Position numbers and translations under genes: made by a program. A DNA stretch of 62,941 nucleotides, filler included, from Octopus bimaculoides (lineage: Eukaryota): NCBI RefSeq assembly GCF_001194135.2. It is 6 parts of 6 records of this genome, joined end to end, with 100 filler letters (N's around TTAATTAATTAA, not from the genome) between each part and the next. Parts side by side here need not be neighbours in the genome. Positions count along the whole stretch, not along the records: positions 53,396 to 58,077 come from NC_068994.1; 5 more parts are not named here. One strand, given 5' to 3'. Below, piece by piece: positions 3,000 to 58,077 of the stretch. Each line of letters opens with the position of its first letter. Position 1 is the first letter of the stretch. The notes under the pieces are model-generated. The model saw only the letters and a program-made list of their open reading frames with translations. It was not told the DNA's origin and made no database searches.

Positions 3000-3090
3000 A
3001 TCTCACCGAGGTCGAATTTGCTTTTTATACTTCTGAGGTCGATAAATAAATATCAAGTCAAGTACTAAGATCAATATACTCGACTGTTCA
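3000..3090 (+). mobile_element. Nin-like SINE fragment
   Basis: caccgaggtcgaatttgctttttatacttctgaggtcgataaataaat. Confidence 0.65.
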
Positions 3091-3239
3091 ATCTATTTTC
3101 AAATTCTTATAATTTATAAAATTGGTATAAAAATCAAGTAAATCTCTTAGGAAAAACAATCACAGAGTTTCGCTCGGTGAAACTAATTATTAGACGTCGA
3201 CATGAGAAATCTATCCTCATTTGCATTAAATTGTGGGCT

Positions 3240-4990
3240 AAAGATCTTGTTCACGAAATTTGCGACTAAATCACAATTTCTGGTTCAACATATTTCCTTA
3301 CCCTGGTGATTCTTCTATATCATTGATAACTTATTGAATGTTATACTAGCCCATTTCTTGAAAACTAGCGTTGAGTGTTTGTGAAATCAATTTTTGAAAA
3401 TAACTAAGAATCTACACTTGTGATTTTCGCCGAAGTAAATCTTCTGGTTTCTCGAATAAAGAAGTATTTATCCGTAATCGTTTGGCAAAGAAACATTTAA
3501 TGCAAATAGATACTTGGCTTAGTTAAAACCAGTCGTTAGACTAAGTTGGTGTTTTACAATCTCAATCGCTGTCAACAGATCTCAATTTATATCTAACAGG
3601 AGCATTATTTGCGTCCTACTAGTAATATATTGGGTACAATGGAGTAAGTCAATATGAATGGTATCTATAAGACAAGTTATAAAATATTGTTATCGGTAAT
3701 ATTGATAAATTGGTTGATGCGAAAAGTGATATAATATGATTGTGTATTATGGTCGTTTATAATTTTCCGAGCAATTTCTCTTGTGAATTTAAGACTAGGG
3801 TGTAGATTGTCGAGGAAGGTTCTGAATTCTTCCAGATTTTCTAGGGATTTGGTCTACATTAGAAAACAATCATCGAGGTATCTTTTCCATGTGTCCTCTA
3901 TATGTCTTTTAAAGATCATGCAGTTGTTTCCCTTCAATTTTTTTATAGGTTTTGTTACAAGTACGTATCCCAATACTGAGTCCGCGAAAACTGGAGCAAA
4001 TTGCGTCCCCATAACTGTGCCAGGATTTGGAGGTAGTTTTTTTCCGTTGAAAAGGAATGTGTTGATTTCGAGGATGAGGCTGACTGTATCTAGTATGAAG
4101 GTAACAGTAAATCTACTGGGGATCGATTCTGTATGTTTCTTGATCCAATATTTTATGGTAGTAATTCCCAAATCGTGTGGAATGTTCGTATATAAGTTTG
4201 TTACCTGAAAATTAGCAGTGAATTGGATTCTGTTGTTTTGGACAGTTGTGACAGGAATTTGATACCATCCCGAATGAAACTGAGCACGTGACTACATAAT
4301 GGTTTTTGGATAATGTCAATGAGGTTACCCAGACGATGTGTAGGACAGGCTGGACCAGCTATAATGGGTCTTAATTTAAGGTCTTTTGATTGTAGTAGTT
4401 TTATGTATTTTACGAAGTTGTTCCTTTATAGCGTTTTGTATTTCTTTTGACTTATGAATTTTAGGTAAGCTATAGAAGTTGCGGGATTTCGACTCAAAAT
4501 TGGTAATATAGTTCCTTTCATTAGAAGTGAGGGAGTTATAATGTTTTGAGACTAAATAATTGCGTTTCTCCAAGATGCGGTGGTCAATATTGGAGGCTTT
4601 TCATGGGAGAACGTTGTATCTTCAAATAATCTTCAGCTAGATCTCGGTAATATTCCGTATCCATTACAACAATGGTACCCATTTATCCGTTTGTTTGATG
4701 ACAATTGTTGAAATCTGTGAAGGATATCAATGAATTGATCTAGATATATGTAATTCGTCCTTTTGGCGGGTTAAATTTTGATTTACTTTTCGCCAAGGAT
4801 TCGTCATTTTCATTATTTTTAGCAGTAAAAAACTCCACAAGTAGTTTTTGAGAAAAGGTTTGGTTGACTGTAGGTGTGAAGTTTAGCCCTTTCATCAATA
4901 ATCGAAGTTCCTCACTGTCTACATTTCTTTTTGATGAATTAATAATTTTAGGGTCTATCCTATCAGATGTTTCACAGTTGTTTCTTCTTG
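3240..4990 (-). mobile_element. Penelope-like retroelement, degenerate RT
   Basis: Minus-strand peptides across frameshifts: LLMKGLNFTPT, FYSLPKIHKS, LRPIIAGPACPTHRL, GTVMGTQFAPVFA, WKRYLDDCF, FLDNLHPSLKFT. Boundaries approximate. Confidence 0.88.
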
Positions 4991-4999
4991 GACTTTTCT

Positions 5000-5165
5000 T
5001 TATATGAATATAAACAAATTACAGAAGACTTCTACCAAATGAAATAAAAGCGATCGAAACCAACTAAGTTTCGCTTAAGCTGCATGTAGTTGTCCTGGGA
5101 CAACTTGCATTTAGACTTGGATTATTTTACAACGAAATAATTACGCCAACAGGCAACATATTCCC
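5000..5165 (+). mobile_element. Short diverged fragment of the Dong/R4-like LINE 5' coding region
   Basis: tcctgggacaacttgcatttagactt...attacgccaaca..gcaacat at about 5092-5160 is nearly identical to about 6338-6405. Confidence 0.7.
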
Positions 5166-5473
5166 AAAAAATTCAGCTTGTTGGAGCCGTCTAAGAGTTC
5201 GCATGGTTGTGTATAGAAGAATACATTAATGAATGAAATTCCATGTTAGTCTGATTTTCGCGTTTTATTATTTACAAATTTTACAATTTTACAATATTGA
5301 AATAAACCAGTACTTGGACCGTGCGATGCGTTGTGTTCTCCACTCAGCTGGCAAAAATGACAAAAATCCTGCGACGGATTGGCGTCCCGTCCAGGTGGGG
5401 AATATATACGCCCTTATAAGCTTGACATGGCTCGAGGAGGAAACATTTATTATATACATATAAATATTACTAT

Positions 5474-5677
5474 TTTACTTGTTTCAGTCATTCGACTGCG
5501 GCTATGCTGGAGCACCGCCTATAGTCGAACAAGTCGACTCCAGGTCTGGTACTGATCCTATTGGTCTCTTTTGCCGAACCGCTAAGTTACAGGGACGCAG
5601 CACCAATATCGGTTGTCAAGCGATGGTGGGAGTACAAACACAGACACACAAACATACATACATACATACATATATAT
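5474..5677 (-). mobile_element. 3' half of CORE-like SINE family, runs into N gap
   Basis: Aligns with 11455-11680. Confidence 0.85.
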
Positions 5678-6029
5678 NNNNNNNNNNNNNNNNNNNNNNN
5701 NNNNNNNNNNNNNNNNNNNNNNNNNNNNNNNNNNNNNNNNNNNNNNNNNNNNNNNNNNNNNNNNNNNNNNNNNNNNNNNNNNNNNNNNNNNNNNNNNNNN
5801 NNNNNNNNNNNNNNNNNNNNNNNNNNNNNNNNNNNNNNNNNNNNNNNNNNNNNNNNNNNNNNNNNNNNNNNNNNNNNNNNNNNNNNNNNNNNNNNNNNNN
5901 NNNNNNNNNNNNNNNNNNNNNNNNNNNNNNNNNNNNNNNNNNNNNNNNNNNNNNNNNNNNNNNNNNNNNNNNNNNNNNNNNNNNNNNNNNNNNNNNNNNN
6001 NNNNNNNNNNNNNNNNNNNNNNNNNNNNC

Positions 6030-6128
6030 AACCAACCAACCAACCAACCAACCAACCAGCCAACCAACCAGCCAACCAACCAACCAACCAACCAACCAAC
6101 CAACCAACCAACCAACCAACCAAACAAA
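6030..6128. repeat. (CCAA)n microsatellite
   Basis: Direct inspection. Confidence 0.95.
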
Positions 6129-6139
6129 CGTGCAGAAAT

Positions 6140-6778
6140 TTACAACAAACGACATGACTGGATGCAACATCAACAACAGAACAGATTGAAAACAATATGT
6201 AAACAGATTCTTATAGAAGAAACCGTAATTACAAAACTCATTTTTCTTCGTGTTATGGATTGAATACTGATTTATTTAACTGTTATAAAAGAGCGAAACA
6301 AAACCCCGCTGTTAGATATATGAATCGATTGAAATCATCCTGGGACAACTTGCATTTAGACTTAAATCATTTTACAACAAAACAATTACGCCAACAAGCA
6401 ACATTTGTGGAACATAGGAAGAAAGTTAGTGAATGTAACTTTATTAAAGAAAGATTTGAAATTAACCTTCTCTCCAACATTATAAACAAAAACAAAAACG
6501 TGAACGATGTGAGAACATCTCGTGGTTTCGCATTTGGAGACATTCGAACAGATTCTATACTGCTTACAGGCCAAACTACATTACTGGCTAAAGTAACAGA
6601 CCACTGTGCCCCTTCTACGACTGTGGTAAATAGCAGACACAACCGCACCGATTATTGTAGTAGTAGTCGTAGACAGGATTATATATCAGTGAAATATGCC
6701 TTCACTGAAATTTTTCGAGAAAAAATAACTTTGGCTCTAAAGTACTCTTTCAAAGAGAGAGTATTCTATACCAAAGTA

Positions 6779-6815
<37 letters not shown>

Positions 6816-7875
6816 CCTCCAGATACGGTATTAAAAGATGCTAACGAAATTGGAGAGGAATATTTACAGCGGGGTAATGAATCCTTATTCTGGCTGATTA
6901 ACACCTGTCTTTCTGCTCTGTCTATTACTGCAAAGCAATACATGAACTGCATTCAAAAAGAGAGCAAAACCGAATCAAAAAAAAAAAAAAAAATGCCATC
7001 ATGGGTTTTGAAGACAGAGAAGTTAACTGATTTATGGAAAACTATCAGTCATGTGATGATGCTTATTGCGTGAAAACAAGCAAATCACTAAATGTCTCAC
7101 CAACAACATGTGAAGAAGGCGACAGAAGTGACGTGTGGAGATGGCAAAAAGAGGAAATCACTTGCAAACTGATCACTCTCAAGCAGGACATAAAAGCTGT
7201 CAGTGAGAAACTCGGAAATCACAAAGGAATAACTGAGAGAAAAACAATAAAGAAAAATATTTAACCGGAACCACGCATCAGTGTACAGAGACATGAGAGA
7301 AGAAAGTGAACATCAGAGAAGCTCCTTTACAAGAATATATAGACTCCTTCTGGAGGTAAATCTGGAGGAAGAAAAAGAGTTTAATTAAGATGCTCTGTGG
7401 GTGAAAGAAATTCGAAGAAGTTACTGCCCCTGCATTACACCCAAGACATACGGCATTGATAGTGATACCCTTGTAAAGGTGATCTAGAAACATCAGGATG
7501 GAAAGGCACCTGGAAGGGACTTGTTTGTTGGATACTGGTATAAGAAGCTAACCTTCTACCGACCATATCTTATCAATCTGTATCAGCAAGCTCTCGATGT
7601 AAACAGCAGCATACGACACTGATTATCTCTAGCGGGGACAAAACTGATCCCCAAATGCAGAACCACCCACATGGCAAAATCTACCGGCCAATTGCTTGCC
7701 AGAACTGAATGCATAAAATATATACAACATGTTTAAACCTCTTCCTCTAAGACCATTGTGAAAGTAATAACATCATTACAGCAGAACAAGCATTTGGGAA
7801 GAAGCGAGTCTGGGGATGTTCCGAGCAACTGTTAATAAACAAAACGGTAATGTCAAAGGTTCTGGAACATAGGTA
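6140..7875 (+). mobile_element. Dong/R4-like non-LTR retrotransposon, 5' part through early RT, degenerate
   Basis: Peptides YMNRLKSSWDNLH..TKQLRQQA, LWVKEI, KAPGRD, WYKKL, TKLIPK, YRPIAC, EQLLINKTVM. Same family as 22565-24440 over about 300 bp of overlap. Confidence 0.82.
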
Positions 7876-8039
7876 GGTTTGGTATAAGACATAAAACAAT
7901 ACTATTTTAAAACCTGGTATATAACGACACCTAAACTTTAGGCAGTGACTTTATAGGGTCAATAACATCCGCTGATATGCCTTATTTCGAAAGTTAATTA
8001 CTAAATATGTTACTATACATAATATGAACATGTATGTAT

Positions 8040-8200
<161 letters not shown>

Positions 8201-10944
8201 TGTATTTATATATTTAAACACTCCTCTATATGTATAATATTATTTAGGGCTGTATAATACTAATTAAGGCATGCTGAAACCAAGAATAGTTGTGTTCAAT
8301 CTTGAAATTGGTGGGATATGAAGTCAGAAGATGAAGGGCTGTATTGCCTCAGGACATTTTGTTTGAGTCTCTAAAATGTCTGACAAATACATCCCCCCTT
8401 TAACATTAACTTCACTAATTTTTCATTAACCTCAACCAATTCTAGTCAATACAGTCAGGTACCACCTTCTCCTAATTTTACTTCCTAAGGCTATCTACAG
8501 AAAATCTCTAGAGATCACCTTAACAAGTGATGTAAGAGCACTGATACCACAGTTGTACACAATATTTACTTATAAAAGCGTTTAATATACTTTATAGTAT
8601 ATTATGGCTGCATAACGAAATACGGTATCCTCACAAGTCATTAATACTTGTGATTGTTTTATATAAGTTGGAATGACAAAGCATTTACAATGAAATTTAT
8701 ATATTATATAGTGTGATTAAAAATGTATTGAATGCGTAGTCAATCATCTTTTTATTTGATAGGAAATGGCAGAATAGAAAAGTTGAGATAAAGTAGCTAT
8801 TGAGAAGTGAATATAAATTGCAAGTGATATATCTCACGCTCAAAATGAAATATCTCATTAAGTAAAAAAATCATTGTTCACCAAAACTATAAAGTATATA
8901 CCATATACTCTCACTGTTCTGTATTTGAAACTCCGTAAAATTGTAGATGGCACTGAATCGAAAAGATGGTATTGAGTACAATTCCGAATGTGATTATGTC
9001 TTTTTAAGTACTGTAACTGCATCAGTATTTCTTTATTAAGTCTCGAAACATTAAGTGCAGAAAATTGATTCAATTGAATAGATTATACTTGCATTTTACT
9101 AATTTGAATTCTTGTGTGCCATTCTACAACATGAACTAATATTTAAGCTATTGAGCATAAATTATTCAGATATTTTCTATCGCTCACGAAAAATACTGTA
9201 AACAGAATTTGTTTTCAATACTCATACAGGCCAAATTACAAGTCTGCATTTGTTTTATAATAGATATCATGGTATTTACTATATTAAAATTTATGGTAAT
9301 GTTATTAATGAATTTTTCATTTATCTGTATAATTTGACCAAATATAGAAACAAATGTACGGATGATTGAATTATGTCTGACAGTATTTTCTATACGGCAA
9401 TGTTCGAGCAAATTTGATTTCTATCTTAAGCCGTTGTGTAATCTCGATATACGCTTGCAGAAACCAACATAATTATATGTTGTCTATCATGCATAATTAC
9501 TGCTACTTTAAACTTGAATTATTTTAGGTCGGTTGGTGATGAATACTCCAAATGTATAATTGCATATTAGCTTTAGTTTGTAAATAGAGTTTGTTATAAA
9601 CTGCCAGAAATAATGTCATGTTTCCAGCAAATGATTTTTCTAATTCCTCATTTAAGAAATCAACGCCATTTGATATTTTTCAAAATTATGCAATAGTAAT
9701 TACTATACAAACCGAAATGATTCTTTTCTTATAGCTCAACCGTCATTTTCTAACTCTGGTTGATTTCTTTAAAAATGCCAATTTTCAGAATTTCCTTACT
9801 CTTTTGCAAACTTTAATTTGGTAAACTATATTCGTATCCAGGTGTTCATTAAACTTAGATTAAAGCTATATGACAGAAAATTAAATAGACGCTCAGTCAT
9901 TCAGATGTGTCGTATAATAAGGAAAAAAAAAGTGCACACGTGTTTTAAACGTCTACTGTTAGAGGCAAAATTCAAAGATTAAATTGCTAGTAAAGAAATA
10001 TATTTATCATTAGATTCTGGCAATCACTCATGGATTAGATTTACATTTATATTTAGAGTTTCAAATAACATGTTTGTTAAAAAAATTCAACTGTTAAAAT
10101 AAGAGACACTTAGTCCTGTTTATTCTTCTAACCGAAATAGAAAGTAGCCTCCAAATTCCAAATTTTATCGGTGCATTACATCTATGTTTCTAATTCTAAG
10201 AAAAGAAATTAAGATGTTGACTGTCAAAATGTTTTCAGTTTTAAAATAAGTAAATTAGTAAGGTGGCAGCATATTCAATATCTCGATATTGATGTAAAAG
10301 TATAAGATTTCCTCTTGCATGTTTATGTGTCTACGATATTGAGCTGGCATATGTTGTATGGTTGTTGCTTTCATTTCTGTCTATTAACAGTCTGAACTAT
10401 ATGATGACCACAGTCTTCTTCAGAGAAGTTGTTCTAAATTGATAGGCCTACAATATACATCAACAGGGCTTGAAATATGTATTGTGCATTCATGACAGGA
10501 AGAGTATCACGCACCGATATGTGATTGTAAAACATGTTGACTAGTATAGTCATTAGAAAGGGATACAGAGAGTAAACGTTATAAATTGAGTGTATGTTGT
10601 GGAAATTTCCGAGCAAGATGTAAAACGTTTAAATTCATAAAGTATTAGGTTGTAAATTTAGCAGAGATGGGGGTCATCATTAAAATAGTCCTTTGTGAAT
10701 TTCTGGGTATTTTCTTTACAATAGAATGTCATGAGGGAAAAAAAATTCAGCAGTGTCAATGAATCGTGTATAATCTGTCGTAATTCAATATTATATGAGT
10801 AATATTATATATGCTAGCTGAGATTTAGATGCATTTTAAATTCTCATTAAATTATTCAAGGCAAGTCCACCACAAAAACACCTGGGAAGACCAAAGATTT
10901 TCATAAACTAATACTTCAGCAGTCTGCCGACTGAGGAATCCCTC

Positions 10945-11079: not shown

Positions 11080-11447
11080 CATATCGATTTTCAGAAATTT
11101 TTTAACATTTTCCATAGGATGTTGATCATCAAACAAATAATCATGGTGGTATGATGTTATTTAAATGACATGCATATTAATTAGAGTTCGAAAAGTTGTC
11201 ATACCATATTGTATGAATTAATTAATTCTTGCCTTAAGCTAAAATTATGCTGGCGTGAATTGCTACAAAGAAATTTTTTTCTGATGAAAATTTATCACCA
11301 TTTCTACGCAGCAGAGTGAAAATAATGCGCGCGAAGTCAGGAAAAAAATATACATGTACTCAAATCATTAGTCAGACTAAATCCGCCAGTAGCGATCTAG
11401 CAATACGTGTTCGAAAATAAATACAGAACATAGAAGGGCATATGTAT

Positions 11448-11686
11448 ACTCTTTTACTCTTTTACTTGTTTCAGTCTTTTGACTGTGGCCATGCTGGAGC
11501 ACCACCTTTAGTCGAGCAAATCGACCCCATGACTTATTCTTTAGAAGCCTAGTACTTATTCTATCGGTCACTTTTTGCCGAACCGCTAAGTTACGGGAAC
11601 ATAAACACACCAGCATCGGTTGTCAAGCGATGTTGGGGGGACAAACACAGACACACAAACACACATACACATACATATATGTATAT

Positions 11687-11769
<83 letters not shown>

Positions 11770-11940
11770 CATATATACGACGGGCTTCTTTCAGTTTCCG
11801 TCAACCAAATCCACTCACAAGGCTTTGGTCGGCCCGAGGCTATAGTAGAAGACACTTGCCCAAGATGCCACGCAGTGAGACTGAACCCGGAACCATGTGG
11901 TTGGTAAGCAAGCTACTTACCATACAGCCACTCCTACGCC
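11448..11940 (-). mobile_element. Complete tRNA-derived SINE (CORE-like family) with internal (AT)n
   Basis: Head GGCGTAGGAGTGGCTGTATGGTAAG..GGTTCAGTCTC (A/B boxes), CORE-like tcttgggcaagtgtctt, central microsatellite, and 3' tail ..tgactgaaacaagtaaaagagtaaaagagt. Confidence 0.88.
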
Positions 11941-12540
11941 TGTGTATATAATTAAATTATCTATAAGATAGAAATTTCATCCTTGCCTTGAAATATTGTT
12001 GCTTTAACACAATAGACTATTTTCTGAAGTAAATCAGATGGCAAACAAAATTAAACCGAATTCCCCCCAAGTTACGCTTATCCCCCTTAAAGAAAGAGGG
12101 AGTCACTGGATTATGCAGTCCTGGTCGATACCTTGGCAGGAATGCATTTGTTCGGAGATGTGCCGATTTAAGTTGAAGTTAGATTCAAAATTAATAATTA
12201 ATTTCTTAATGCTTATCCGGGACGAAATTTGACAGTACTTTTCAGCATATAAATGCATAGACTATATACAGTTTGGTTACTTGAAAGCTGAAACCCCATC
12301 ATTTGGACTGAATAGTGGATTTATTGTAACGTTATACAAACTATCTGAGTAAGATTCTGCCACTTTAGGTACAATTCAGTTTTCTTGGGCATTTGTTGTC
12401 TAGCCCTAGGTCATCTCTTATCGAGCACATAACTGATATATGATTATACATACATCCATAAATGCATACATACATACATATACACATGCACAGACACATA
12501 CACACATATACACACATATGTATAAATATCTAGGCGTAAG

Positions 12541-17339: not shown

Positions 17340-17800
17340 AATAGTTCAGAAATAAGTTCTATACATTTTATAAGAAGAAGGAGAAAAACATCTTTTGTTC
17401 AGTTCATGCGAAAATAGGATTGTAGCTAATAACAGAGCATGGAATTTAAAGCCGTTGTTAAGGATTCATTTCTCATAACACATAGGCACCACGATCTTTT
17501 CAGCTCCAATAAAGGGAGAGAAAGCTGTAGTTGCTGTGTTAAAATGACATCCCAAATCCAACATCGCAAATTAAGAAAATCTCCATTGTCACAGGCAATA
17601 TTCGATTTCCCTCATAATTGTCAATTTTTGCAATCCTATCTTTTTAAAAGAAGTTTGCTATATATAGCAAGCTTCACGTCCATTGAAGAGATTATTTTAC
17701 ACGACTTACTGCAAAAAACTTCAAAGTTAAATACTAGCATATTTCTCTTATACACACTTAATTCTAGGGGTGTACACAATTATACCTTAACATCACGGTA
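17340..17800 (+). mobile_element. Internal fragment of the Dong/R4-like LINE, inverted relative to 18190-21640
   Basis: About 17595-17700 aligns to the reverse complement of about 19085-19185. Confidence 0.75.
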
Positions 17801-18053
17801 TTAAAAATGTTTCAATATCCTATCATATCTTGGCGAGAACCATACTATCCATACAAAAAAAAAACAAAAAAACAAAAACAAACAAACAAACACCCACTTT
17901 ATGTTTATACAAAAATTACAAATCCAGAGCAGAACAATATTCAATAGGAGATTTTAATCTAATTTGATTTTGATGTGAAAGGAAAATACAAAATTAATTC
18001 AAGCTAGCAGAATTCCCTGCCGAACAGCATCATTATCTATGTGTGTTATGCAC

Positions 18054-18155
18054 GAATGTATGTATGTATGTATGTATGTATGTATGTATGTATGTATGCA
18101 TGTATGTATGTAAGTATGTATGTATGCATGTATATATGTATATATGTATGTATAT
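18054..18155. repeat. (TGTA)n microsatellite
   Basis: Direct inspection. Confidence 0.93.
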
Positions 18156-18189
18156 TTGTTGTATTTCTGTTTTAAAATTAGAATAAATT

Positions 18190-21100
18190 TCGACCGGACA
18201 CCTGCTTTATAAAAAGGGTGTGGTTGAAAGCATCTTGTTTTGTTCATCATCATGTAAACCTTTCAGGTTTTTATACTCCCAGATATCGTGATTATTTGTA
18301 GTGTATGAATTAATAATAAGCGTTCGCGCTCCGGTAATCCAAGTTCCACCATACTTTACTCCAGACGGGTTGGTACATAACGTGTTGCTTCAGAAGTAGG
18401 TATGAAGCTGAAAGTATTGCGTATTGGATTTGCATATTCCTTATCAATGGTCTATAGATGGCCTCTTTCTTTTGTATTTTTCCAACTTCATTGGTGTCTA
18501 GAGATCAGCTGATTTCCACAACAGAATATATATCTTTCCTGTTTTGTTTTAACTTTGGAGGCTGTTTTAATTTTGAAGTTTCTTCAATATTCTTTTGGAC
18601 CATCAGTTTCAATTTCTTCACTTTCTTCTGTATGTATTTTTCTTTTTCTTCCTGTTCTGCCAACCGCATAAAGCCACATGTGAATATATCTGGAATGCAC
18701 TCCCTCGAAGCTGGCAATAATGTGATTGATATATTCAGTGTTGATCTAGCACAGCCTACATTAGTTGTCTGTCAATGTTTTCTGCGTTTTATGCTGTAGG
18801 TACTTGGTGAGGATCCCTTTTCCTTCAATTGCATGGAAGTAACCTTCTAAGTGGGATGTCATAAGCTTGTCGGTAGTCCATGCTAAGCTTTTGTCATGAT
18901 CAGTTCTTTCTATGGTTAGTGTTTTTCGTGCTAAGTACACATATACTATCTTGACAGTGAACTGGTCCATTTTTTTTATTGTGTCCTTTTGATAAATAAA
19001 TTTCACCAATGCACCTGGGGAAGAAATATGCATCAGCTTTCATTTCATGCCTCTTTTCAGGTCCAATAGCTAAGTCCTGTAAAGTAATTCTATATCTTCA
19101 ATGGACGTGAAGGTTGCTATATATAGCAACCTTCTTAAAATGGTAGGATTGTAAAAATAGGTAACTCAGAGGGAAATTGAATAGTTACTACCCTAATTAT
19201 TTTCTTGATTTCATGCTCACAAACTTGCGCAAGATAGTAAATGGTCTTTTCCCTTTGCTGAAGATGTTGTTTCAGTGTCACAATAAGTGCTTCACATAAC
19301 ATCAATACAAATTTGAGACTACATCCACCATCCTTGCGCAGGGGGTATAGCCTGTCTACATATCTATTGATGTTGAAGTTTTCTGTAACACTGAATAGCT
19401 TGCGAGTTAGAACATCTATCTCATTGAGTCCTTGTTGTACCCTGTTCAGAAGTCCAAAAGTGGGCGTGAGGATAGGTATTACAAAGATGTAGGCAATATA
19501 CTTGTTAGATAAGAGGTCTGATGATCATATTCTCTTTACTCTTCTGTGATATTTATTTTTGGTCCAGTCCTTATTTATGGGCCCATCATATCTGACTTTA
19601 TCATCCTGTCCAAGATACCTATAATTGTCACATGGTTGTAGAGTTTGTTTTGTATTGTCAAACCATTCATTTTTATGTTTTCAGTGGAGGGCACAACTTT
19701 AGCACATTTTGTCATAAAAAATTCACATTTAGACTAAATTTCATTCTAACATCTGTAAAATGTTGAGCATAAAATTGTGTAATGAAATGTAATTGTCTTT
19801 TTATACATTTTGTATGCAGCCGAAATTTGGTCCATACAGTTTCCGGTCATAGAAAAGACGGTAGATACTTTTGGATCTATTTCTATGGCTACTATGTTTT
19901 GTGAGGAGGTATGATAGTGTGTTTACTGAGAGGATAAAGAGCAGCTTTGCCGGGCTATCATCATGAAAGATGACTACGAACGCTATCAGATTCAATTTTC
20001 TCCTTATCACTCCTAAGGAGCAACGTACTCTACCAAGTCTTATTAAGGCGTTCAATAGCAGTTACTAGTGGTTGTGGGAGTAGCTGTAAAGCCTTGATAA
20101 TCCACCCATGTGATATAGTAGCAAACGCCCTCTTATAGTTCAGCTACACTACAACTGCATTTTCTTACTGTTTGTTCGTCCGGATCAAGTTGCTTTACAC
20201 AGCCCGACATTTGCTTTCTTTCAGCTTGTTCAAGTGTTTCGGTGATTGGCAAGCATTTCGGTGGTAATCGTTTGTTAGGGTGGTCTCGGAGGATGAGGAA
20301 AGTAGTCGCACTTGATAACATTTGGGGAAGGTTCTTGTGTACCGTTGATACTCTCTCCATACCACAATATGAGATCTCACTGATAAAAGGTTAACATCTT
20401 CAGCTAGTAACCTGATATGAGGTCTGGGCCAGGAGATGTATTGTTTGACATTTTCTGTAGAACAGTTTTCAGTATTTTACCATCTGTTTCATATTGCTTT
20501 TGCTGGGCATACTAGCAGTAACCTGCTCCAGTTCATTTAGCTATGCACCCTGTTTTTGTTTGAATTCATCATTTGTTTCCCATACAGATCTCCAGTAGCC
20601 CTTAACCTGATCTTTTGTAGGGGTGTTTTCTTGAGATTGAAGCTGCTACAGACTAACTTATGATCTCTGGCAAATAATCTATTGAGCATTTTTGTTTATA
20701 TGCTGTAGATTTATAGTGTAGTTTTTTTTAGCTGTGAGTTGTTGCTTCAGCTGGCGCCGTTTAGAGTCTAGGTCTTTGAATCCTGTATCACCGAAACCCC
20801 TGTAGATTTTTTCTAAGGTTTTCCTGGTGTGGTGTAAAGTTGTTCCCCATTTTGAATTTCATAAGTACAAAGAACTGCGATAATTCTTTATAGAAATAAA
20901 ATTTTATTTTGTAAGTTACGAGTTCGTGCTAGTTCAGGCATTCAGCTTGTACTTCGATTGCGTCGTTTCAGCTTTTTGCCATACACTAGAAATGTAATAG
21001 CAGAGACATTGATCAAAAGATAAATGGTGTCCGAGGTGGTTTTCGTACCTCTAAACTGTGTGGTCTTCAGATATTTCTTTGCTATTTCGTTAACTACTTT

Positions 21101-21640
21101 TAATTCTAATTTACTTCGTTATTTATATATACCGGTGTTGTATGGTCTGCCATTCAAATTAAGTTGGGGACCTGTTGAAACATATCATTCCAGATCACTT
21201 GTAAGGCGTGCGCAAGGTTTTCGTGTTCTGTTTATACAGCAGAGGTATGAATTTCAGCTAAATTACTGGTGTGTTGTTTACTGCTAGATTTAGCTGACCG
21301 TTCCGTCTCTCCAACAGTGGGAATGGGATGACTATCTTGAGTGACTGTTTTGTAGCGTCAGCGTACTTTGAATCAGATACTTCCATTATATATATCACTT
21401 TACATCTCATGATAAGTTATACTCCTTCATTGAGATGTATTTCGGGAAAATATGTCTTAGTGTTTGGAGTTCTACAACTTTATTAGCCTTTGCATATAAC
21501 CGAACTTTTGGGAGTCGGATTGTATATGATTGTCTTATAAATCTTTGTTGAGGTCGTAGTTCCATCGTATAAAGTGATTCTACACCAGATTTGGTTGAAG
21601 TAGACATACTTGTAACCACGATTATTTTGTTTATTTACTG
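18190..21640 (-). mobile_element. Near full-length but degenerate Dong/R4-like LINE
   Basis: Minus-strand motifs PGPDLISG, TWVDYQ, VDRLYPLRKDGG, W..DKLMTSHLEGYFHAI. The C-terminal RLE region is homologous to 24050-24240, followed by a short 3'UTR. The 5' boundary is approximate. Confidence 0.82.
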
Positions 21641-22030
21641 ATGTTTATATCTGGTTATAAAAGATTCGAGAAAGTTCTGTCACAATTAAATTTAAAGGTG
21701 TTCACAGCTTGGGTAATATTTCCTTTCAGGTTGTTTCCAATTCTACAACTACATTTCAAAGTATTCATTTAATGTTTTTGGTTTTTCTGAATTGATTTCA
21801 AATATTACTTGGTTAATTTCTTTATGCGTGTAACGTTGCATATAAATATGGCAAAATGCATCATTAATATAGACATTCTACAATATATGCAATATTTAAA
21901 CAGTTATGCAGAAATATTCGTGTGTAATCTCACCGCATTCTGTAGCTCAACTTTTACAATATTTGGTATGTTGTAGTCAATTAAGTAGCAATTACAAACG
22001 CAATTATCGGACCGATAACAACGGTCACCC

Positions 22031-53395: not shown

Positions 53396-54656
53396 CCTGT
53401 GTCTCTCTGTCCACTGCTTTCTTTAGAACTATTTTATATTCCTTTGATCCCATTGACTGTAGTTTGAATGTGTCGTCTTTGATATGACAGTTCACCTGTC
53501 CATTGTGTCCAACATCGTTGTCAGTGACCATCACATAAGCAATGAAACTACCAACTTTGATATCTTCCAGAATGGTGGCTGTGTTGTGATTCTGTGTAGA
53601 AATAAAGTTCACATCAATATTTGGAGGATTGTTCTGCTGGTTGATGACATTTACCATAACAGTGGCAATGGAACTGAGAGGAGGGTCGCCACCATCTCTG
53701 GCTTCTATGAATATTTTCGATGTATCCAATTTACCTAAATTTAAATTTGTAGACAATAAAATTTCTCCATTTTTTGTATTTAATGTAAAATATTTACTCG
53801 ATGTTTCAGACGTGATAGGACTAAAATAGTAAGATATTTCACCATTGTTGCCAATATCAAAGTCATAAGCAGATAATGTAACAATTGCCTTATGTTTTGG
53901 ATGTGTGTCATTTATACTAATTCTGTAAATTCTCTGAGAAAAAACAGGTGAATTATCATTAACATCTGAGATATTTATTTGAACATTTAGAATTGTTTGT
54001 TTTGGAGGATTCCCGCCATCTTCAGCAATAACTTCAATATTGTAAACATCTTTAATTTCTCTGTCTACTTTACCTTCCAAGACGATATCTAGGTGAGAAG
54101 TTCCATCCGCTCTTTTAAAATCTTGTAAAGTAAAAGGATAATTTCGTTTTTTCTTTAATTTGTACATAATTAATCGATTTTGACTCCCAACATCCTTGTC
54201 TGTGGCATCTGGGATTGATTTTCTCCTGTCTTGGCCATCCATTTCAGAAAACTGTAAGATGATATGATCTACAGGGAATTTAGGCCAGTGGTCATTGATG
54301 TCTTCGATAATGATTTTGATTTTTAGAATTTTTATAAACTGTTTTCCTTTGTGAGCTGCAACATTGATTGTTTGAATGCACTGTTTTTCAAGAATACAGA
54401 GAGCCTCAGCATCCAATGGATGAACAGTGAACATTTTCCCTGGTTTAGTGATATTAAATAGATGTCTTCCATTCTGCTGTAGCTGGATGAATGTAAGTAA
54501 GTGTCTTTCATGGTGTTTTAAACTGTCCCATAGACCAGAATCTTCTGCAATATCTCCAATGTAAGAATTAGCAGTATTTTCTTCCTCCACCATATAGATA
54601 AGTTCATTGTAACAACAGTGGAAGAAAGCCAGGAGGATACATAAATATGTTAACAT
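53396..54656 (-). CDS. Protocadherin, large ectodomain exon (signal peptide, EC1-EC3, N-terminal part of EC4); 3'-truncated by artificial spacer
   Basis: 420 open codons from ATG 54656. Hydrophobic leader MLTYLCILLAFFHCC; cadherin motifs VEEE, LDAE, Cys-X5-Cys (CILEKQC), DINDHWPKF, ATDKDVG, VDRE, AEDGG, DVNDNSPVF, AYDFDIG, ARDGG, VTDNDVG, VDRE. No introns across the repeats, as is typical of protocadherins. The trailing X...LIN* in the ORF track comes from the spacer. Confidence 0.96.
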
Positions 54657-54709
54657 TTTTAGTCAAGTTAGTGTAAGGTGCAGCATTTTATAGCAGTCAT
54701 TGTTTTCAT

Positions 54710-54730
54710 CTGAAAAAGATAAATGAAATA
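54710..54730 (-). promoter_or_regulatory. 3' splice acceptor of the 5'UTR intron of the protocadherin
   Basis: Minus strand reads tatttcatttatctttttcag|atgaaaaca... Confidence 0.7.
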
Positions 54731-55199
54731 GTGAAAACAAAATTAAGACACCATGTTTTTAAATTGATTGAAGAATAACATTTTATAGCTCCAAAATAAC
54801 AGTATTAGACTTATAGAGTAGAATGTAAGTTCTATATTTGTTCATGTATTACTAAACTAAGAATTAGATTCAATATTGAAAGAAAAATAATAGCCATAAT
54901 GCATTAATTCACAAGTCAACAATTTAACTGAAGTTGTAAAAGATTATGTCCAAAGGTATTTTATTTGTCATTTTACTGTACATTTCTCTGTCAGCAGGAG
55001 TTGGATAGGCTTCTCACTGCCATCTCATCTGCGAAGTCCCAAATCCTGAAACCTGATTTTGCTCACGGCCTATTTTACATATCCATCAAATCAAACTCAA
55101 CTCATTTTTTTTGTTCCATATAATAAAATTGTTTCCAGTGTTTCTCAAAAATATAGTTTGTCTCTGACAACATCTTAACAATTGGTAAGGAAGAGAACC

Positions 55200-55310
55200 A
55201 CATACTGGGGTCGATAAATTAAGTACCAGTTGTGTACAGGAGTCAATCTAATCAACTGGCCCCCTTCCCGCAAAATGTTGGGCCTTCTGCCTAGAGTAGA
55301 AAAGGATATA
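55200..55310 (+). mobile_element. 3' half of Nin-like SINE inside the putative protocadherin 5'UTR intron
   Basis: ggggtcgataaattaagtaccagttgtgtacaggagtcaatctaatcaactggcccc. Confidence 0.75.
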
Positions 55311-55594
55311 AATTCCATAAAGATGCTCCAAATTGATTGTATTTTATTTTTTGAAATTCTGTTATTCTTCAAATATACTTCTAATATCAATTTCTTATAT
55401 TGTTACAAGACTCCGTATATGTAAAGGAGGAGGTACTGCCAATTGAACTGGGTTTAAGTAAATACCTTGTATTTATTCTATTGCTTCAGGAGGAATGAAA
55501 GGCAAAGTTGTTTCTGGAGTAAATTGGAAACAGAATATAGAGATGAAAATAAATATGGACACGCAAGAAAATATTTATGAAAATATAAACTTAC

Positions 55595-55850
55595 ATTGAT
55601 TGTGTGTAAAATCCTTTGTTGTATAAACTGTGACTTGATCCCAGTGTGTTCTGTTGTTAATGGTTGTCTGTGTCACTGCTGCTATGGTGTGACAATGGCT
55701 TCATGTTGATGGAATAGTGTTGGTGGTGAGTCAGTGGGGAACCAGCAGTTCCTCTCAGTCTTCCTTTGTGGATGTGTGATGGCTTGAGAGTGTGTGAGAG
55801 TAAACGTGTATAAGTGTGTGTGTTGTGTGAGAGAGACTCGAGTGATGCTT
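55595..55850 (-). other. Probable non-coding first (5'UTR) exon of the protocadherin
   Basis: C/A-rich, less AT-rich segment ending in a strong donor CAAT|GTAAGT (G at 55594). It pairs with acceptor tatttcatttatctttttCAG (54712-54710), 53 nt upstream of the ATG. The 5' boundary is a guess. Confidence 0.55.
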
Positions 55851-56463
55851 ACTCCAGCCTCACTCAGAGTAAATGCTCTGTTTCCCTAAACATAGAGCAA
55901 AAGATAAGGGGAACATACAATATCTGTTCCATTAAGAGTCAGTTGTAAAAGGTCCATATAACACCAACATGATATAGAGAAGATAACTTTGATCATATCC
56001 ACTTGTGTAAAGAGAGAACAAAAGTATTTAGTATTTAGAAGAGGTTATTGTAAGTCAGTGTAACTAATGTTAGTAAAACATCCCTAACTGATAATGTAAT
56101 CAGAAGTTCTATGCAATCTAAATATGAATTATTTCCTGTAAGTGATAGGAATATTGAGAGAAGTATTCTAATTTGCCTTCCAAATATTAATTCAAATGTA
56201 TATGATTTGCCTAAAATTCTCAAAACTATGAATGAAATATTTATGATCCATTCATTTTGTTAAAATTAAAAATAAAATAATTGAATGAAATTAACCAAAA
56301 ATATATTTTTAAAAATTTGTTTTCTTAAAAATCAAATCATTAATACATTATCATTAATTAATACTTTCTCACTTAACTAATTTAAATAAACTGAATATGC
56401 TTTAGAACAATATTTTCAATGATGGCAATTTGTTTTACTGTTGCCAGGTTACCAATTCAAATG

Positions 56464-56582
56464 TCACTGATTTATAACATCTGGTGGTGAAGGCAACTGT
56501 CTCTCAGGGTTTTTTACATATCTCTCTTGGTATAGTTGTCCTTCATTACTGGCTGACATATCTGATCGGATAGTGTAATGTC
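56464..56582 (-). CDS. Terminal coding exon of the same upstream gene
   Basis: Acceptor atatatttcttgtttcAG. Read in phase 1 (matching the previous donor) it gives (G)HYTIRSDMSASNEGQLYQERYVKNPERQLPSPPDVINQ* with TGA at 56466-56464. Intervening intron 56583-56992 is GT..AG. Confidence 0.68.
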
Positions 56583-56992
56583 CTGAAACAAGAAATATAT
56601 CAACACCATTGGTCATTACACCAAACATTTTAATTGATGTTTCATTATTTTAATCCACTCTATGATATTTTATTTAATTTAGATGAGTTTTTATGCGTTC
56701 TAAGAGGCATTGACACAAATGAAAAGGAAATAATGATATTAATAAATGTATATTTATATTTCTAAATATAACTTAAAAAACCTAATTTTCTCCTTGGAAT
56801 TTACACACAACTACCATATATATTACACTGAACTCTCAAACAGATTAAACGCATCAAATATATAAAGTACTGCCTTCATAACAATTTGAACAGACAAAAT
56901 ACATGAGACTAGAAACTATATTTCTTCAAAATTTTCAAAAACTCTTTAGTAATACCACTTATATGAAAAGAAGAAATTACAAAGTCTCTTAC

Positions 56993-57143
56993 CTGACATT
57001 GCTGGTATTTCTTCATACTGTCTACTTGACCGCTCACTCCAGCACTGTCCACTACTCTTACGACTGGTCAATGTGTCAGTGGGATAATTAGAAGATGGTC
57101 TGTTATCTCCGTAAGATGTCACCTCAATGGGTTGACTGTATTT
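56993..57143 (-). CDS. Internal coding exon (151 nt) of an upstream same-strand gene; probable protocadherin cytoplasmic domain
   Basis: Acceptor ctttcattactcatcAG and donor ATGTCAG|GTAAGA. Encodes KYSQPIEVTSYGDNRPSSNYPTDTLTSRKSSGQCWSERSSRQYEEIPAMS(G), phase 0 in and phase 1 out. In-frame stops just upstream require splicing. Protocadherin identity is inferred from position and Ser/Thr/Tyr-rich composition. Confidence 0.7.
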
Positions 57144-58077
57144 CTGATGAGTAATGAAAGGCATTTATCAGTGAGTATGGTATAATACAAACATAGGCCA
57201 TAAACACAGCCCCTACTTCCAGACCACACCATTAAATAAAAAAAACATTGTGTTAATAAAATTGATAATATTAGTAATATTATATTAATTTTAACAGCTA
57301 ATTCTATGGTCAACCCTACTAAATTCACTGTAGAAATCAATACAAGAGAGTGTTCTCTAAAATTATTTGTTGCAGTGGATTTATTCCATGTCTGCAGAAT
57401 GAATGGAAATGACCACAGTTTAGTCCAATCAACAGAATTCTTGTTCTTCCTTATTTCAATCCTTAATAAGTTCAACTGAGTGATTCATGTTTAGCAATCC
57501 ATATAATAATTTGTTTATAATCATTTGTATTCATTAAATACAAAATAATTATTTCTGAGAAAAGATTCTAAACCCTGCTAAGCCCTTCCCCCTTGAATTT
57601 CCAATTTTGTTATTTTGCTTCTCTTCAGCTTTATTTAAGACTAGAAAACCGACAACAGAGAGAAGCACAGCTCCTGCAGCTCTAATCACAGTAAAATAAG
57701 TAATTTCCTCTAACAACTAATTAATAGATTGCTTGTATGACTAATCTTCTCCGTCCATTGACTCTGCATCATACATCTTTGGCTGATTCAGCCAACACCC
57801 ACCTCCCCCACCATTTCTATTACGGTGATAGTTATTTCCCTTCCACCATTACTTCCAGATACCAATGCAAACAGGAAATTGAATTTCCCCACCAATGTTG
57901 CCAGTGTTATGACCTTTCTAAGCTAAAAGACCCCAGAATTTCTGCTTCCCCCCCCCTCCAATTCTTACTTCCTCACTTCTTTCTTCTCTCTCCTTCATCC
58001 TTCCTCCCCACCCCTCTTTCCTATCTTTTACTTTTTCTTCTTTTCCTCTTTCCTTCCTTCCTCTTCCTTTCTCTTTT

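What the first reader, a model, noticed from the sequence alone, without database searches (positions are those of the whole stretch)
56464..57143. Hidden two-exon cytoplasmic tail just upstream of the protocadherin: tandem cluster, possibly a shared 'constant' C-terminus
Seen: two minus-strand exons with canonical splice sites and matching phase (151-nt exon, 410-nt GT-AG intron, 119-nt terminal exon). They splice into an 89-codon open frame ending ...QYEEIPAMSGHYTIRSD...LPSPPDVINQ*, about 1.8 kb 5' of the protocadherin ATG. No transmembrane or ectodomain exon lies within this piece. Known: coleoid protocadherins are greatly expanded in head-to-tail clusters, and vertebrate clustered Pcdhs splice variable ectodomain exons to constant cytoplasmic exons. 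Inference: this is the tail of the preceding protocadherin. If several upstream ectodomain exons splice to it, it would be a convergent variable/constant architecture. It carries Tyr motifs (YEEI, YTI) and a PSPP motif that could dock signalling proteins.
Basis: partly seen in the sequence, partly recalled or inferred. Interest (0 to 1): 0.7.

Follow-up and report, generated by a model that had tools for sequence, protein, structure and literature searches.

The report
Ordinary per-gene octopus protocadherin tail exons
The two small exons are real and encode the last 89 residues of the cytoplasmic tail of the neighbouring upstream octopus protocadherin, but every gene in such clusters carries its own copy of them, so this is ordinary tandem gene duplication and not a vertebrate-style shared constant region.

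Summary
The minus-strand exons are 57143-56993 (151 nt) and 56582-56464 (119 nt, ending in TGA). The GT-AG intron between them is 410 nt. They splice into an 89-codon frame.

The first part of the interpretation, that this is the tail of the preceding protocadherin, is strongly supported by homology. The same peptide forms the C-terminus of an annotated O. bimaculoides protocadherin (P0005, residues 526-645). It also ends the 877-879-aa Argonauta hians protocadherins.

The second part, a shared constant C-terminus, is not supported. Seven complete repeat units were examined in A. hians, O. bimaculoides and O. sinensis. In each, the large ectodomain exon is followed within 0.3-1.6 kb by its own intact copy of both tail exons. 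Published work says cephalopods do not splice many first exons to shared final exons (PMC9068888).

The tail has no Pfam match and is predicted to be disordered. It keeps seven tyrosines in all eight tails compared, including a YEEI motif.

Two side observations. The tail belongs to a block running from EC4 to the C-terminus that is about 98% identical between paralogues, while the introns have diverged beyond alignment. Each gene also has its own conserved non-coding leader exon.

Interest is low and the thing is already known.

The parts
57144..58077 (-). 3' part of the intron between the upstream protocadherin's large exon and the 151-nt exon. The large exon lies beyond the edge of the piece. 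A purine-rich low-complexity stretch sits at about 57960-58077.
   Evidence: tblastn found no match to the end of the large exon (SDRYGHSRSHYYPEDWKTSTMNR..) or to the transmembrane segment. The homologous intron is 1373-1590 nt in O. sinensis, so a length above 934 nt is expected. No nucleotide similarity to other loci was found upstream of 57149.
56993..57143 (-). Penultimate coding exon (151 nt; the intron before it is phase 0 and the one after it is phase 1) of the upstream protocadherin's cytoplasmic tail. It encodes KYSQPIEVTSYGDNRPSSNYPTDTLTSRKSSGQCWSERSSRQYEEIPAMS(G). The YEEI motif is at 57017-57006.
   Evidence: The amino-acid sequence is identical to copies in O. bimaculoides and O. 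sinensis. Nucleotide identity to seven foreign copies is 141-147 of 151. Conservation starts at the AG and ends at the GT.
56583..56992 (-). 410-nt GT-AG intron (phase 1).
   Evidence: The homologous intron is 165 nt in O. sinensis, 347 nt in O. bimaculoides and about 380-880 nt in Argonauta. Its sequence is not conserved between loci.
56464..56582 (-). Terminal coding exon segment (119 nt including TGA at 56466-56464). It encodes (G)HYTIRSDMSASNEGQLYQERYVKNPERQLPSPPDVINQ*. This is a divergent variant of the IYG../LYG.. terminal exon found in other octopod protocadherins.
   Evidence: 53-59% amino-acid identity to the other terminal exons by tblastn, with Y, YQ[DE]RYVK and PERQLPSxPDV conserved. 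One search shows 94.1% nucleotide identity without gaps to L002, against 83-86% in the flanks.
55981..56463 (-). 3' UTR of the upstream gene and a short intergenic spacer. The exact poly(A) site is unknown.
   Evidence: no AATAAA or ATTAAA lies between the stop and the leader exon in the window (the first is at 55477). Most homologous units have one 90-350 nt after the stop.
55595..55980 (-). Conserved block interpreted as the promoter-proximal region and non-coding leader (5' UTR) exon of the downstream protocadherin. The core is 55777-55595 and the donor GT is at 55594-55593. It contains a conserved upstream ORF starting at 55704 (MKPLSHHSSSDTDNH*).
   Evidence: It is 68-93% identical to blocks that follow every tail in L001, L005 and L006. 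Conservation ends at a GTAAGT (or GTAAAT) present in 10 of 11 copies. The transcription start was not mapped.
54710..55594 (-). Inferred intron in the 5' UTR of the downstream protocadherin (GT at 55594-55593, AG at 54711-54710).
   Evidence: the acceptor (T)TTCAG about 53 nt before the ATG is invariant in all 8 units compared. One search shows the conserved donor.
53396..54709 (-). Start of the large exon of the downstream protocadherin. The ATG is at 54656. It encodes the signal peptide, EC1-EC3 and the start of EC4, and is cut off by the edge of the piece. Similarity to paralogues switches sharply at NPPNIDV (53630-53610).
   Evidence: Cadherin 5.5e-29, Cadherin_2 3.4e-10. (best database hit only 62% identical). 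(about 50% amino-acid and 60% nucleotide identity before the switch, 100% and 97-98% after it).

Best explanation
These are the last two coding exons of the protocadherin gene that lies immediately upstream on the minus strand. That gene's large exon, which encodes the signal peptide, ectodomain, transmembrane segment and proximal cytoplasmic part, lies beyond the edge of the piece.

Genes of this octopod subfamily have four exons:
1. a short non-coding leader exon;
2. one large exon that ends with ...SDRYGHSRSHYYPEDWKTSTMNRTLQKST[KR];
3. a 151-nt exon;
4. a terminal exon of about 119 nt of coding sequence.

The whole four-exon unit has been duplicated in tandem, so every gene carries a private copy of the tail exons. 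The nearest-neighbour donor and acceptor join them, and no sharing between genes is needed.

The 89 residues encoded here are the distal part of a cytoplasmic domain of about 157 residues. This domain is intrinsically disordered and rich in Ser, Thr and Tyr. Seven tyrosines are conserved in all eight tails compared, and one of them sits in YEEIP. The most likely role (inferred, not shown) is a phospho-regulated docking segment. Two candidate mechanisms are binding of an SH2 domain of a Src-family kinase at pYEEI, and YxxPhi-type endocytic sorting. Because the tail sequence is nearly the same in all paralogues, receptors with different EC1-EC3 recognition domains would feed a common intracellular output.
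For: **Shown**
- Canonical splice sites and a single open frame across the junction.
- The peptide matches the C-terminus of 'protocadherin gamma-C4-like' of O. bimaculoides (P0005, residues 526-645; profile E = 1.7e-64).
- In Argonauta locus L001, gene models of 879 and 877 aa that carry Cadherin Pfam domains end with these exons. A reconstructed 876-aa protein has Cadherin_2, six Cadherin stretches, a hydrophobic transmembrane segment and this tail.
- All 7 complete foreign units in 3 species have an intact large-exon donor, a 151-nt exon and a terminal exon in frame.
- The window has the same order on the same strand: tail, conserved leader block, then the next protocadherin.
- The leader donor lies 776-915 nt after each tail's stop codon.
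- The exons are under purifying selection. The 151-nt exon has 15-18 of 17-19 four-fold sites identical to the foreign copies, next to introns that cannot be aligned. The terminal exon is 94% identical to L002, against 83-86% in its flanks.
- AlphaFold2 gives mean pLDDT 55.5 and pTM 0.13, with one short helix, which is consistent with disorder.
- No Pfam domain was found.

**From the literature**
- Octopus protocadherins are multi-exonic, arranged head to tail and expanded by duplication of whole genes, without shared final exons (PMC9068888; PMC6339937).

**Own knowledge**
- pYEEI is the optimal ligand for Src-family SH2 domains (Songyang et al. 1993).
Against: - The upstream large exon is not in the piece, so physical linkage of this particular tail to an ectodomain exon is inferred only from homologous loci.
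- No transcript data were available, so the junctions are supported by homology and conservation and not by reads.
- The terminal exon is an unusually divergent variant (53-59% amino-acid identity to the common type). No annotated protein carries it.
- No canonical poly(A) hexamer follows the stop codon in the window.
- The signalling function of the motifs is entirely inferred.
Confidence: 0.88

Rival explanations
1. One reading: these exons are constant exons shared by several upstream variable ectodomain exons through alternative splicing, in a convergent copy of the vertebrate clustered-protocadherin architecture.
For: - The tail sequence is nearly identical among paralogues, so it behaves as a constant region at the protein level.
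- Some NCBI models in related loci span more than one unit. One is a 1788-aa model in L006. Another is a 143-aa model in L005 that skips a nearer terminal exon. Read-through or cross-unit splicing therefore cannot be formally excluded.
- The window lacks a canonical poly(A) hexamer after the stop codon.
Against: - Every complete unit examined (7 of 7 foreign units) has its own tail exons 0.3-1.6 kb downstream of its own large-exon donor. Nothing needs to be shared.
- Vertebrate variable exons have no private 3' exons.
- PMC9068888 states explicitly that cephalopods do not splice multiple first exons to shared final exons.
- The odd models coincide with assembly gaps or a disrupted reading frame.
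- There is no homology to the vertebrate constant region.
Confidence: 0.04
2. An independent small gene encodes a soluble protein of about 120-128 aa, as public annotation suggests (O. sinensis LOC115219122 isoform X2; A. hians Ahia01_000691400; several O. bimaculoides 'uncharacterized proteins').
For: Gene models of 120, 128, 129, 143 and 208-209 aa exist in databases. They begin at a Met just upstream of, or within, the tail.
Against: - In Argonauta, the 128-aa model's start Met lies inside an uninterrupted 805-codon frame (7712-10126). That frame encodes a complete ectodomain and transmembrane segment.
- The flanking units, with virtually the same tail sequence, are annotated as 877-879-aa cadherins.
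- The O. bimaculoides and O. sinensis short models sit next to N gaps or a broken large exon.
- In the window there is no homologue of the model's first coding segment within 934 nt upstream.
Confidence: 0.03
3. An orphan or decaying tail: the upstream ectodomain exon has been lost or disrupted, leaving a non-functional remnant.
For: - The upstream exon cannot be seen in the piece.
- The terminal exon is divergent.
- There is no canonical poly(A) signal.
- Fragmentary protocadherin pseudogenes are reported in cephalopod clusters (PMC9068888).
Against: - The frame and all four splice signals are intact.
- The 151-nt exon is identical in amino-acid sequence to functional copies and 95-97% identical in nucleotides.
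- The terminal exon evolves more slowly than its flanks and has no indels.
Confidence: 0.05

Closest known systems
Octopod clustered protocadherins (tandemly duplicated, multi-exonic PCDH genes of Octopus bimaculoides, O. vulgaris, O. sinensis and Argonauta; Albertin et al. 2015 and 2022; Styfhals et al. 2019)
   Same: - The tail sequence matches: the 151-nt exon is identical in amino-acid sequence to O. bimaculoides and O. sinensis copies.
- The exon structure is the same.
- The genes are arranged head to tail, and a cadherin-domain gene follows on the same strand.
   Different: - The terminal exon is a divergent variant (HYTIRSD...PSPPDVINQ instead of IYG...PSTPDV[IV]..). Apart from an unspliced ORF (P0003) called on unannotated Logan contigs, no protein in the databases searched carries it.
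- The adjacent gene's EC1-EC3 region is at most 62% identical to any database protein.
Vertebrate clustered protocadherins (Pcdh-alpha and Pcdh-gamma variable exons spliced to three shared constant exons)
   Same: - Variable ectodomains are paired with an essentially invariant cytoplasmic C-terminus.
- Each unit has its own upstream conserved non-coding element or promoter region.
- The membrane-proximal ectodomain and the tail are homogenised among paralogues, as in the gene conversion described for vertebrate clusters by Noonan et al. 2004 (reference list of PMC6339937; its content is from own knowledge).
   Different: - The invariant tail is encoded separately in every gene and is not shared by splicing.
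- There is no sequence homology to the vertebrate constant region (Pfam Cadherin_tail) or to Cadherin_C_2.
Vertebrate Pcdh-beta genes and non-clustered protocadherins (each gene complete in itself)
   Same: Each gene has a private C-terminus, and the family grew by tandem duplication of whole genes.
   Different: - Pcdh-beta genes have a single exon and short, variable tails.
- Here the tail is split over three exons and kept nearly identical among paralogues.
pYEEI-type Src-family SH2 docking motifs and YxxPhi sorting signals in receptor tails
   Same: The sequence QYEEIP is invariant in all eight tails compared and lies in a disordered, Tyr-rich segment.
   Different: No evidence of phosphorylation or binding exists. 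This is a resemblance by motif only.

Membership tests
Octopod clustered protocadherin gene (cytoplasmic tail exons) | The peptide is homologous to the C-terminus of proteins that carry cadherin repeats and a transmembrane segment. | tested here: met
   P0005 carries the tail at residues 526-645 of 646. The Argonauta 877- and 879-aa cadherin models end with it. A reconstructed 876-aa protein has Cadherin_2 and six Cadherin stretches.
Octopod clustered protocadherin gene (cytoplasmic tail exons) | Exon boundaries and phases match the homologous genes. | tested here: met
   All 8 copies are 151 nt with AG and GT signals. Conservation begins and ends at the splice sites.
Octopod clustered protocadherin gene (cytoplasmic tail exons) | Head-to-tail tandem arrangement with another protocadherin on the same strand. 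| tested here: met
   The window has the stop at 56464 and the next protocadherin ATG at 54656 on the same strand. The same order is seen in L001, L005 and L006.
Octopod clustered protocadherin gene (cytoplasmic tail exons) | The tail exons are joined in one transcript to an ectodomain and transmembrane exon immediately upstream. | not testable with these tools
   The piece ends 934 nt upstream of the exon, and no transcript data were available. Exact-ORF look-ups found no longer contig.
Vertebrate-type variable/constant clustered protocadherin locus | Variable ectodomain exons lack private 3' exons, and one set of constant exons at the 3' end of the cluster serves them all. | tested here: not met
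   In 7 of 7 complete units in three related genomes, each large exon has its own tail exons. The literature states the same (PMC9068888). This could not be tested in the window's own genome beyond this piece.
Vertebrate-type variable/constant clustered protocadherin locus | The constant region is homologous to Pfam Cadherin_tail (PF15974), or the cytoplasmic part to Cadherin_C_2 (PF16492). | tested here: not met
   No Pfam family reached E <= 1 for the 89-aa peptide or for the whole 165-aa cytoplasmic domain.
Src-family SH2 ligand (pYEEI) or YxxPhi sorting signal | Y-E-E-I sequence in an accessible (disordered) cytoplasmic segment. | tested here: met
   YEEI lies at 57017-57006. It is invariant in all eight tails compared. 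The region has low pLDDT. The divergent tail of P0007 lacks the Tyr.
Src-family SH2 ligand (pYEEI) or YxxPhi sorting signal | Tyrosine phosphorylation and binding to an SH2 domain or to AP-2 mu2. | not testable with these tools
   This needs phosphoproteomics or binding assays.

The most novel reading that the evidence does not exclude
The tail exons are part of a constant module that is encoded in every gene and not shared by splicing. The module comprises the leader exon, the large exon from EC4 to its end, the 151-nt exon and the terminal exon.

The supporting evidence:
- The coding parts of the module are about 98-100% identical in nucleotides among paralogues.
- They are about 94-97% identical between Octopus and Argonauta, including four-fold degenerate sites.
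- The intervening introns and EC1-EC3 have diverged to 42-76% identity.

This would be a DNA-level analogue of the vertebrate constant region. It could be kept by exon-restricted gene conversion together with selection acting on the nucleotide sequence itself. That selection might arise because the mRNA is an A-to-I editing substrate, since editing is reported to be enriched in cephalopod protocadherins (bioRxiv 10.1101/714394). The pattern itself was observed here. What is uncertain is whether it has been described before and whether there is an RNA-level cause. The only structural test run, a fold of the spliced tail, gave a z-score of -1.74, which is not significant.
Probability: 0.3. Interest if true: 0.5.

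Novelty: already known. Interest (0 to 1): 0.15.

Why it matters
The finding matters mainly as a negative result. It removes a tempting hypothesis, that octopuses convergently evolved vertebrate-style variable/constant splicing. It confirms from raw sequence what genome papers state: cephalopod protocadherin diversity comes from duplication of whole genes, and each gene keeps its own tail.

There are two practical by-products.
- Several 'uncharacterized protein' models in public annotation are truncated protocadherin tails. These include O. sinensis LOC115219122, A. hians Ahia01_000691400, and O. bimaculoides LOC106878683 and LOC128249405.
- The subfamily's gene model appears to have four exons, with a conserved non-coding leader exon that annotation could use.

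The near-invariance of the tail, including a YEEI motif, points to a common intracellular output for many different recognition ectodomains. This can be tested experimentally.

Tried and rejected
1. **First coding segment within the piece.** I looked for the first coding segment of the homologous models (MSDRYGHSRSHYYPEDW...), and for a second copy of the terminal exon, inside the piece. Neither was found. The large exon is therefore off the piece, and no alternative terminal exon lies here.
2. **Extending the window.** Exact-protein look-ups of the window's unspliced ORFs (56464-56628 and 56946-57164) were not on record. P0001 was not on record either.
3. **Independent small gene.** Rejected because the Argonauta 128-aa model starts inside an intact 805-codon protocadherin frame.
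4. **Homology to vertebrate cytoplasmic domains.** Pfam gave no hit.
5. **RNA structure as the cause of synonymous-site conservation.** The spliced 270-nt tail folds with z = -1.74, which is not significant. There was no Rfam hit.
6. **Tandem repeats.** Only trivial AT-rich and purine-rich arrays were found.
7. **Counting tail-bearing proteins.** The word-indexed search returned only 3 candidates although identical 51-aa stretches exist in P0005. The 50%-representative library collapses the family to a few entries. No family-wide count could be made.
8. **Papers not held.** Albertin et al. 2015 and Liscovitch-Brauer et al. 2017 were not available under the PMC ids I tried. Statements about them come from citing papers or from my own knowledge.
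9. **Source species.** It could not be identified. The constant coding parts are 97-98% identical to both O. bimaculoides and O. sinensis. Non-coding DNA aligns only to Logan contigs from SRR11869384, SRR11869390 and SRR11869391, at 81-83%.

Full report
**1. The observation.**

On the minus strand, the sequence ...cattactcatcAG|AAATACAGTC opens an exon at 57143. That exon closes at 56993 with ...GCAATGTCAG|GTAAGAGA. A 410-nt intron ends in ...atatttcttgtttcAG|GACATTACAC at 56582, and the frame runs to TGA at 56466-56464. Joining the 151-nt and 119-nt segments leaves exactly one open frame, which encodes 89 residues: KYSQPIEVTSYGDNRPSSNYPTDTLTSRKSSGQCWSERSSRQYEEIPAMSGHYTIRSDMSASNEGQLYQERYVKNPERQLPSPPDVINQ*. 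The next protocadherin ATG is at 54656, which is 1808 nt downstream, and its product has Cadherin and Cadherin_2 domains.

**2. What the exons are.**

- The spliced peptide finds an O. sinensis 'uncharacterized protein LOC115219122 isoform X2' (120 aa, E = 2.7e-37). It also finds an Argonauta hians hypothetical protein (128 aa, E = 2.0e-36) and an unspliced 63-aa ORF from Logan assemblies.
- At first sight this suggests a small independent gene. The genomic context of the Argonauta protein (L001) shows otherwise. It sits between cadherin genes of 879 and 877 aa.
- tblastn finds three complete copies of the tail in that 21-kb locus. The first and third are the annotated C-termini of the flanking cadherins.
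- The middle copy, the '128-aa gene', is preceded by an uninterrupted 805-codon frame (7712-10126). That frame encodes a signal peptide, ectodomain and transmembrane segment, and it runs straight into the model's start Met. The small gene is therefore a truncated annotation of a full protocadherin.
- An exhaustive profile search found the tail at residues 526-645 of 'protocadherin gamma-C4-like' of O. bimaculoides (P0005). It also found a more divergent version at the end of O. vulgaris protocadherin QBA31128.1 (P0007).
- Several O. bimaculoides 'uncharacterized' models of 128-209 aa are tail-only fragments of the same kind. In the one O. bimaculoides locus I read (L005), N gaps interrupt the large exons.

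**3. Shared or private?**

I fetched the O. bimaculoides (L005) and O. sinensis (L006) loci around the closest relatives of the window's downstream protocadherin. I then mapped six landmarks by tblastn.

In every complete unit, three in Argonauta, two in O. bimaculoides and two in O. sinensis, the order is the same:
- EC1;
- the transmembrane segment;
- the end of the large exon (MSGNRGE.SDRYGHSRSHYYPEDWKTSTMNR.LQKST[KR], followed by a GTAAG/GTAAA donor);
- an intron of about 0.34-1.6 kb;
- the 151-nt exon;
- an intron of about 0.17-0.88 kb;
- the terminal exon and stop codon.

All seven reconstruct an intact cytoplasmic domain of 150-158 residues. All eight 151-nt exons, counting the window's, keep their length and GT donor. 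A further partial unit at the start of L005 and an orphan terminal exon next to a 5.5-kb N gap fit the same pattern. The joined Argonauta unit C gives 876 aa, which matches the annotated 877-aa product with the optional Gln. It has Cadherin_2, six Cadherin stretches and no cytoplasmic Pfam domain.

So each ectodomain exon owns its tail. This is the opposite of the defining feature of the vertebrate alpha and gamma clusters. Albertin et al. [quoted passage not shown]

In the window the large exon is not present within the 934 nt available upstream. This agrees with the 1.4-1.6-kb intron at this position in O. sinensis.

**4. Anatomy of the rest of the piece.**

- blastn of the foreign loci against the piece revealed a conserved non-coding block at about 55980-55595. 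Copies of it follow every tail in all three species, and its end lies 776-915 nt after the stop codon.
- The alignment shows a core that is highly conserved, and nearly invariant among the Octopus copies. Conservation ends exactly at a GTAAGT (or GTAAAT) present in 10 of 11 copies. In the window the donor GT is at 55594-55593.
- All eight large exons begin with an invariant (T)TTCAG acceptor about 53 nt before the ATG. In the window the AG is at 54711-54710.
- The simplest reading is that the block is the non-coding first exon of each downstream gene, with its promoter. On this reading the genes have four exons, and each has its own 5' end immediately after the previous gene's 3' end. The transcription start was not mapped, so this is an inference.
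- The leader contains a conserved short upstream ORF (ATG at 55704).

**5. How the tail probably works.**

- The 89 residues are Ser/Thr/Tyr-rich and have no Pfam match. AlphaFold2 predicts essentially no structure: mean pLDDT 55.5, pTM 0.13, and one short helix over ERQQYQDRYV.
- Seven tyrosines are conserved in all eight tails compared. One of them is in QYEEIP.
- YEEI is the textbook optimal ligand for Src-family SH2 domains once phosphorylated (own knowledge). It also fits the YxxPhi endocytic signal.
- Vertebrate Pcdh-alpha tails bind Fyn (cited in PMC6339937), so a tyrosine-kinase-coupled tail would be a functional parallel. None of this has been tested.
'PSPP' is PSTP in the other tails, so the conserved element is LPS[PT]PDV.

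**6. Conservation pattern (beyond the finding).**

Among Argonauta paralogues:

| Region | Nucleotide identity |
|---|---|
| EC1-EC3 | 74-76% |
| Rest of the large exon | 98% |
| 151-nt exon | 99-100% |
| Terminal exon | 96-98% |
| Intron 1 | 42-76% |
| Intron 2 | 45-54% |

- The window's downstream protocadherin shows the same sharp switch at NPPNIDV (53630-53610), the EC3/EC4 linker. Before it, identity to O. bimaculoides and O. sinensis paralogues is about 50% in amino acids and 60% in nucleotides. After it, identity is 100% and 97-98%, and about 90% of four-fold sites are identical.
- The window's 151-nt exon is 141-147 of 151 identical to all foreign copies. This includes 15-18 of 17-19 four-fold sites, while the flanking introns cannot be aligned.
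- The tail is therefore constant in sequence though not in genomic arrangement.
- Gene conversion has been proposed for these clusters (PMC9068888; PMC6339937 citing Albertin 2015). Conversion alone does not explain conservation of synonymous sites between genera. Selection at the nucleotide level, for example for RNA editing substrates, is a possibility I could not test. A simple fold of the spliced tail is unremarkable (z = -1.74).

**7. Is this copy functional?**

Yes, as far as sequence can tell.
- The frame and splice signals are intact.
- The 151-nt exon is identical in amino-acid sequence to Octopus copies.
- The divergent terminal exon is 94.1% identical, with no indels, to a related genomic contig (L002, Logan SRR11869390). 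The surrounding non-coding DNA is 83-86% identical with indels.

The one oddity is the absence of AATAAA or ATTAAA between the stop codon and the leader exon.

**8. Verdict.**

'Tail of the preceding protocadherin' is supported. 'Shared constant C-terminus, convergent variable/constant architecture' is not supported and is contradicted by three related genomes and by the literature. The feature is an ordinary member of a known gene family in a known arrangement.

Noticed in passing
window 55595-55980 (minus); L001 5029-5161, 11927-12197, 18038-18493; L005 1177-1453, 7845-8272, 13832-14225, 21798-21999; L006 3927-4295, 14578-14924, 15923-16204: A conserved non-coding block follows every protocadherin tail, 776-915 nt after the stop codon. 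It ends at a GTAAGT (or GTAAAT) donor present in 10 of 11 copies, and conservation stops there. It is probably the leader (5' UTR) exon and promoter-proximal region of each downstream gene. It contains a conserved short upstream ORF (window ATG at 55704, MKPLSHHSSSDTDNH*) and an upstream TATA-like GTGTTATATGGAC at about 55964. O. sinensis has two copies after one tail.
   Followed up: partly
window 54700-54720 (minus) and the equivalent positions in L001, L005 and L006: The large exon of all 8 protocadherin units starts at an invariant (T)TTCAG acceptor about 53 nt before the ATG. The coding exon is therefore not the first exon. In the window a mini upstream ORF (ATGAAAACAATG...TAA, 54709-54668) begins right at the acceptor.
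   Followed up: partly
window 53396-53630 (minus), switch at NPPNIDV 53630-53610: There is a sharp boundary at the EC3/EC4 linker of the downstream protocadherin. Upstream of it, identity to paralogues is about 50% in amino acids and 60% in nucleotides. Downstream it is 100% and 97-98%, and four-fold degenerate sites are mostly identical. The same switch is seen among the Argonauta paralogues and between genera.
   Followed up: partly
window 57144-57146 compared with L001, L005 and L006 acceptors of the 151-nt exon: Argonauta, O. bimaculoides and O. sinensis have a tandem CAGCAG (NAGNAG) acceptor. It can add one Gln, and the models differ accordingly: ..KSTKQKYSQ.. against ..KSTRKYSQ... Argonauta unit B has lost the proximal AG (CAGCAA). 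The window has only one AG (TCATCAG).
   Followed up: partly
window 55478-56463 (minus): No AATAAA or ATTAAA hexamer lies between the tail's stop codon and the next gene's leader exon. The first is at 55477-55472, inside the next gene's 5' intron. Most homologous units have one 90-350 nt after the stop. The poly(A) site of the upstream gene is therefore unclear, and an AGTAAA lies about 25 nt after the stop.
   Followed up: no
L001 7712-11260; L006 10001-14136; L005 (N runs 1476-6993, 11385-11993, 17798-18629, 20135-21795): Public annotation splits several protocadherins into an N-terminal cadherin fragment and a tail-only 'uncharacterized protein'. Examples are A. hians Ahia01_000691400, probably O. 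sinensis LOC115219122, and O. bimaculoides LOC106878683 and LOC128249405. Other models fuse neighbouring units, such as a 1788-aa model in L006. In O. bimaculoides the near-identical constant regions coincide with assembly gaps. In O. sinensis unit B the large exon's frame is interrupted between 11335 and 11583.
   Followed up: partly
L002-L004 (Logan SRR11869390, SRR11869391, SRR11869384) against window 56933-55647: These unspliced genomic contigs are collinear with the window at 81-83% identity. They carry the same rare HYTI[RQ]SD terminal-exon variant. They come from a related species or a paralogous unit. The source organism of the window could not be identified.
   Followed up: partly
window 57960-58077 (minus): There is a purine-rich low-complexity tract (aaaagagaaaggaagagg...) at the edge of the piece, inside the upstream intron. 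No function is suggested.
   Followed up: no
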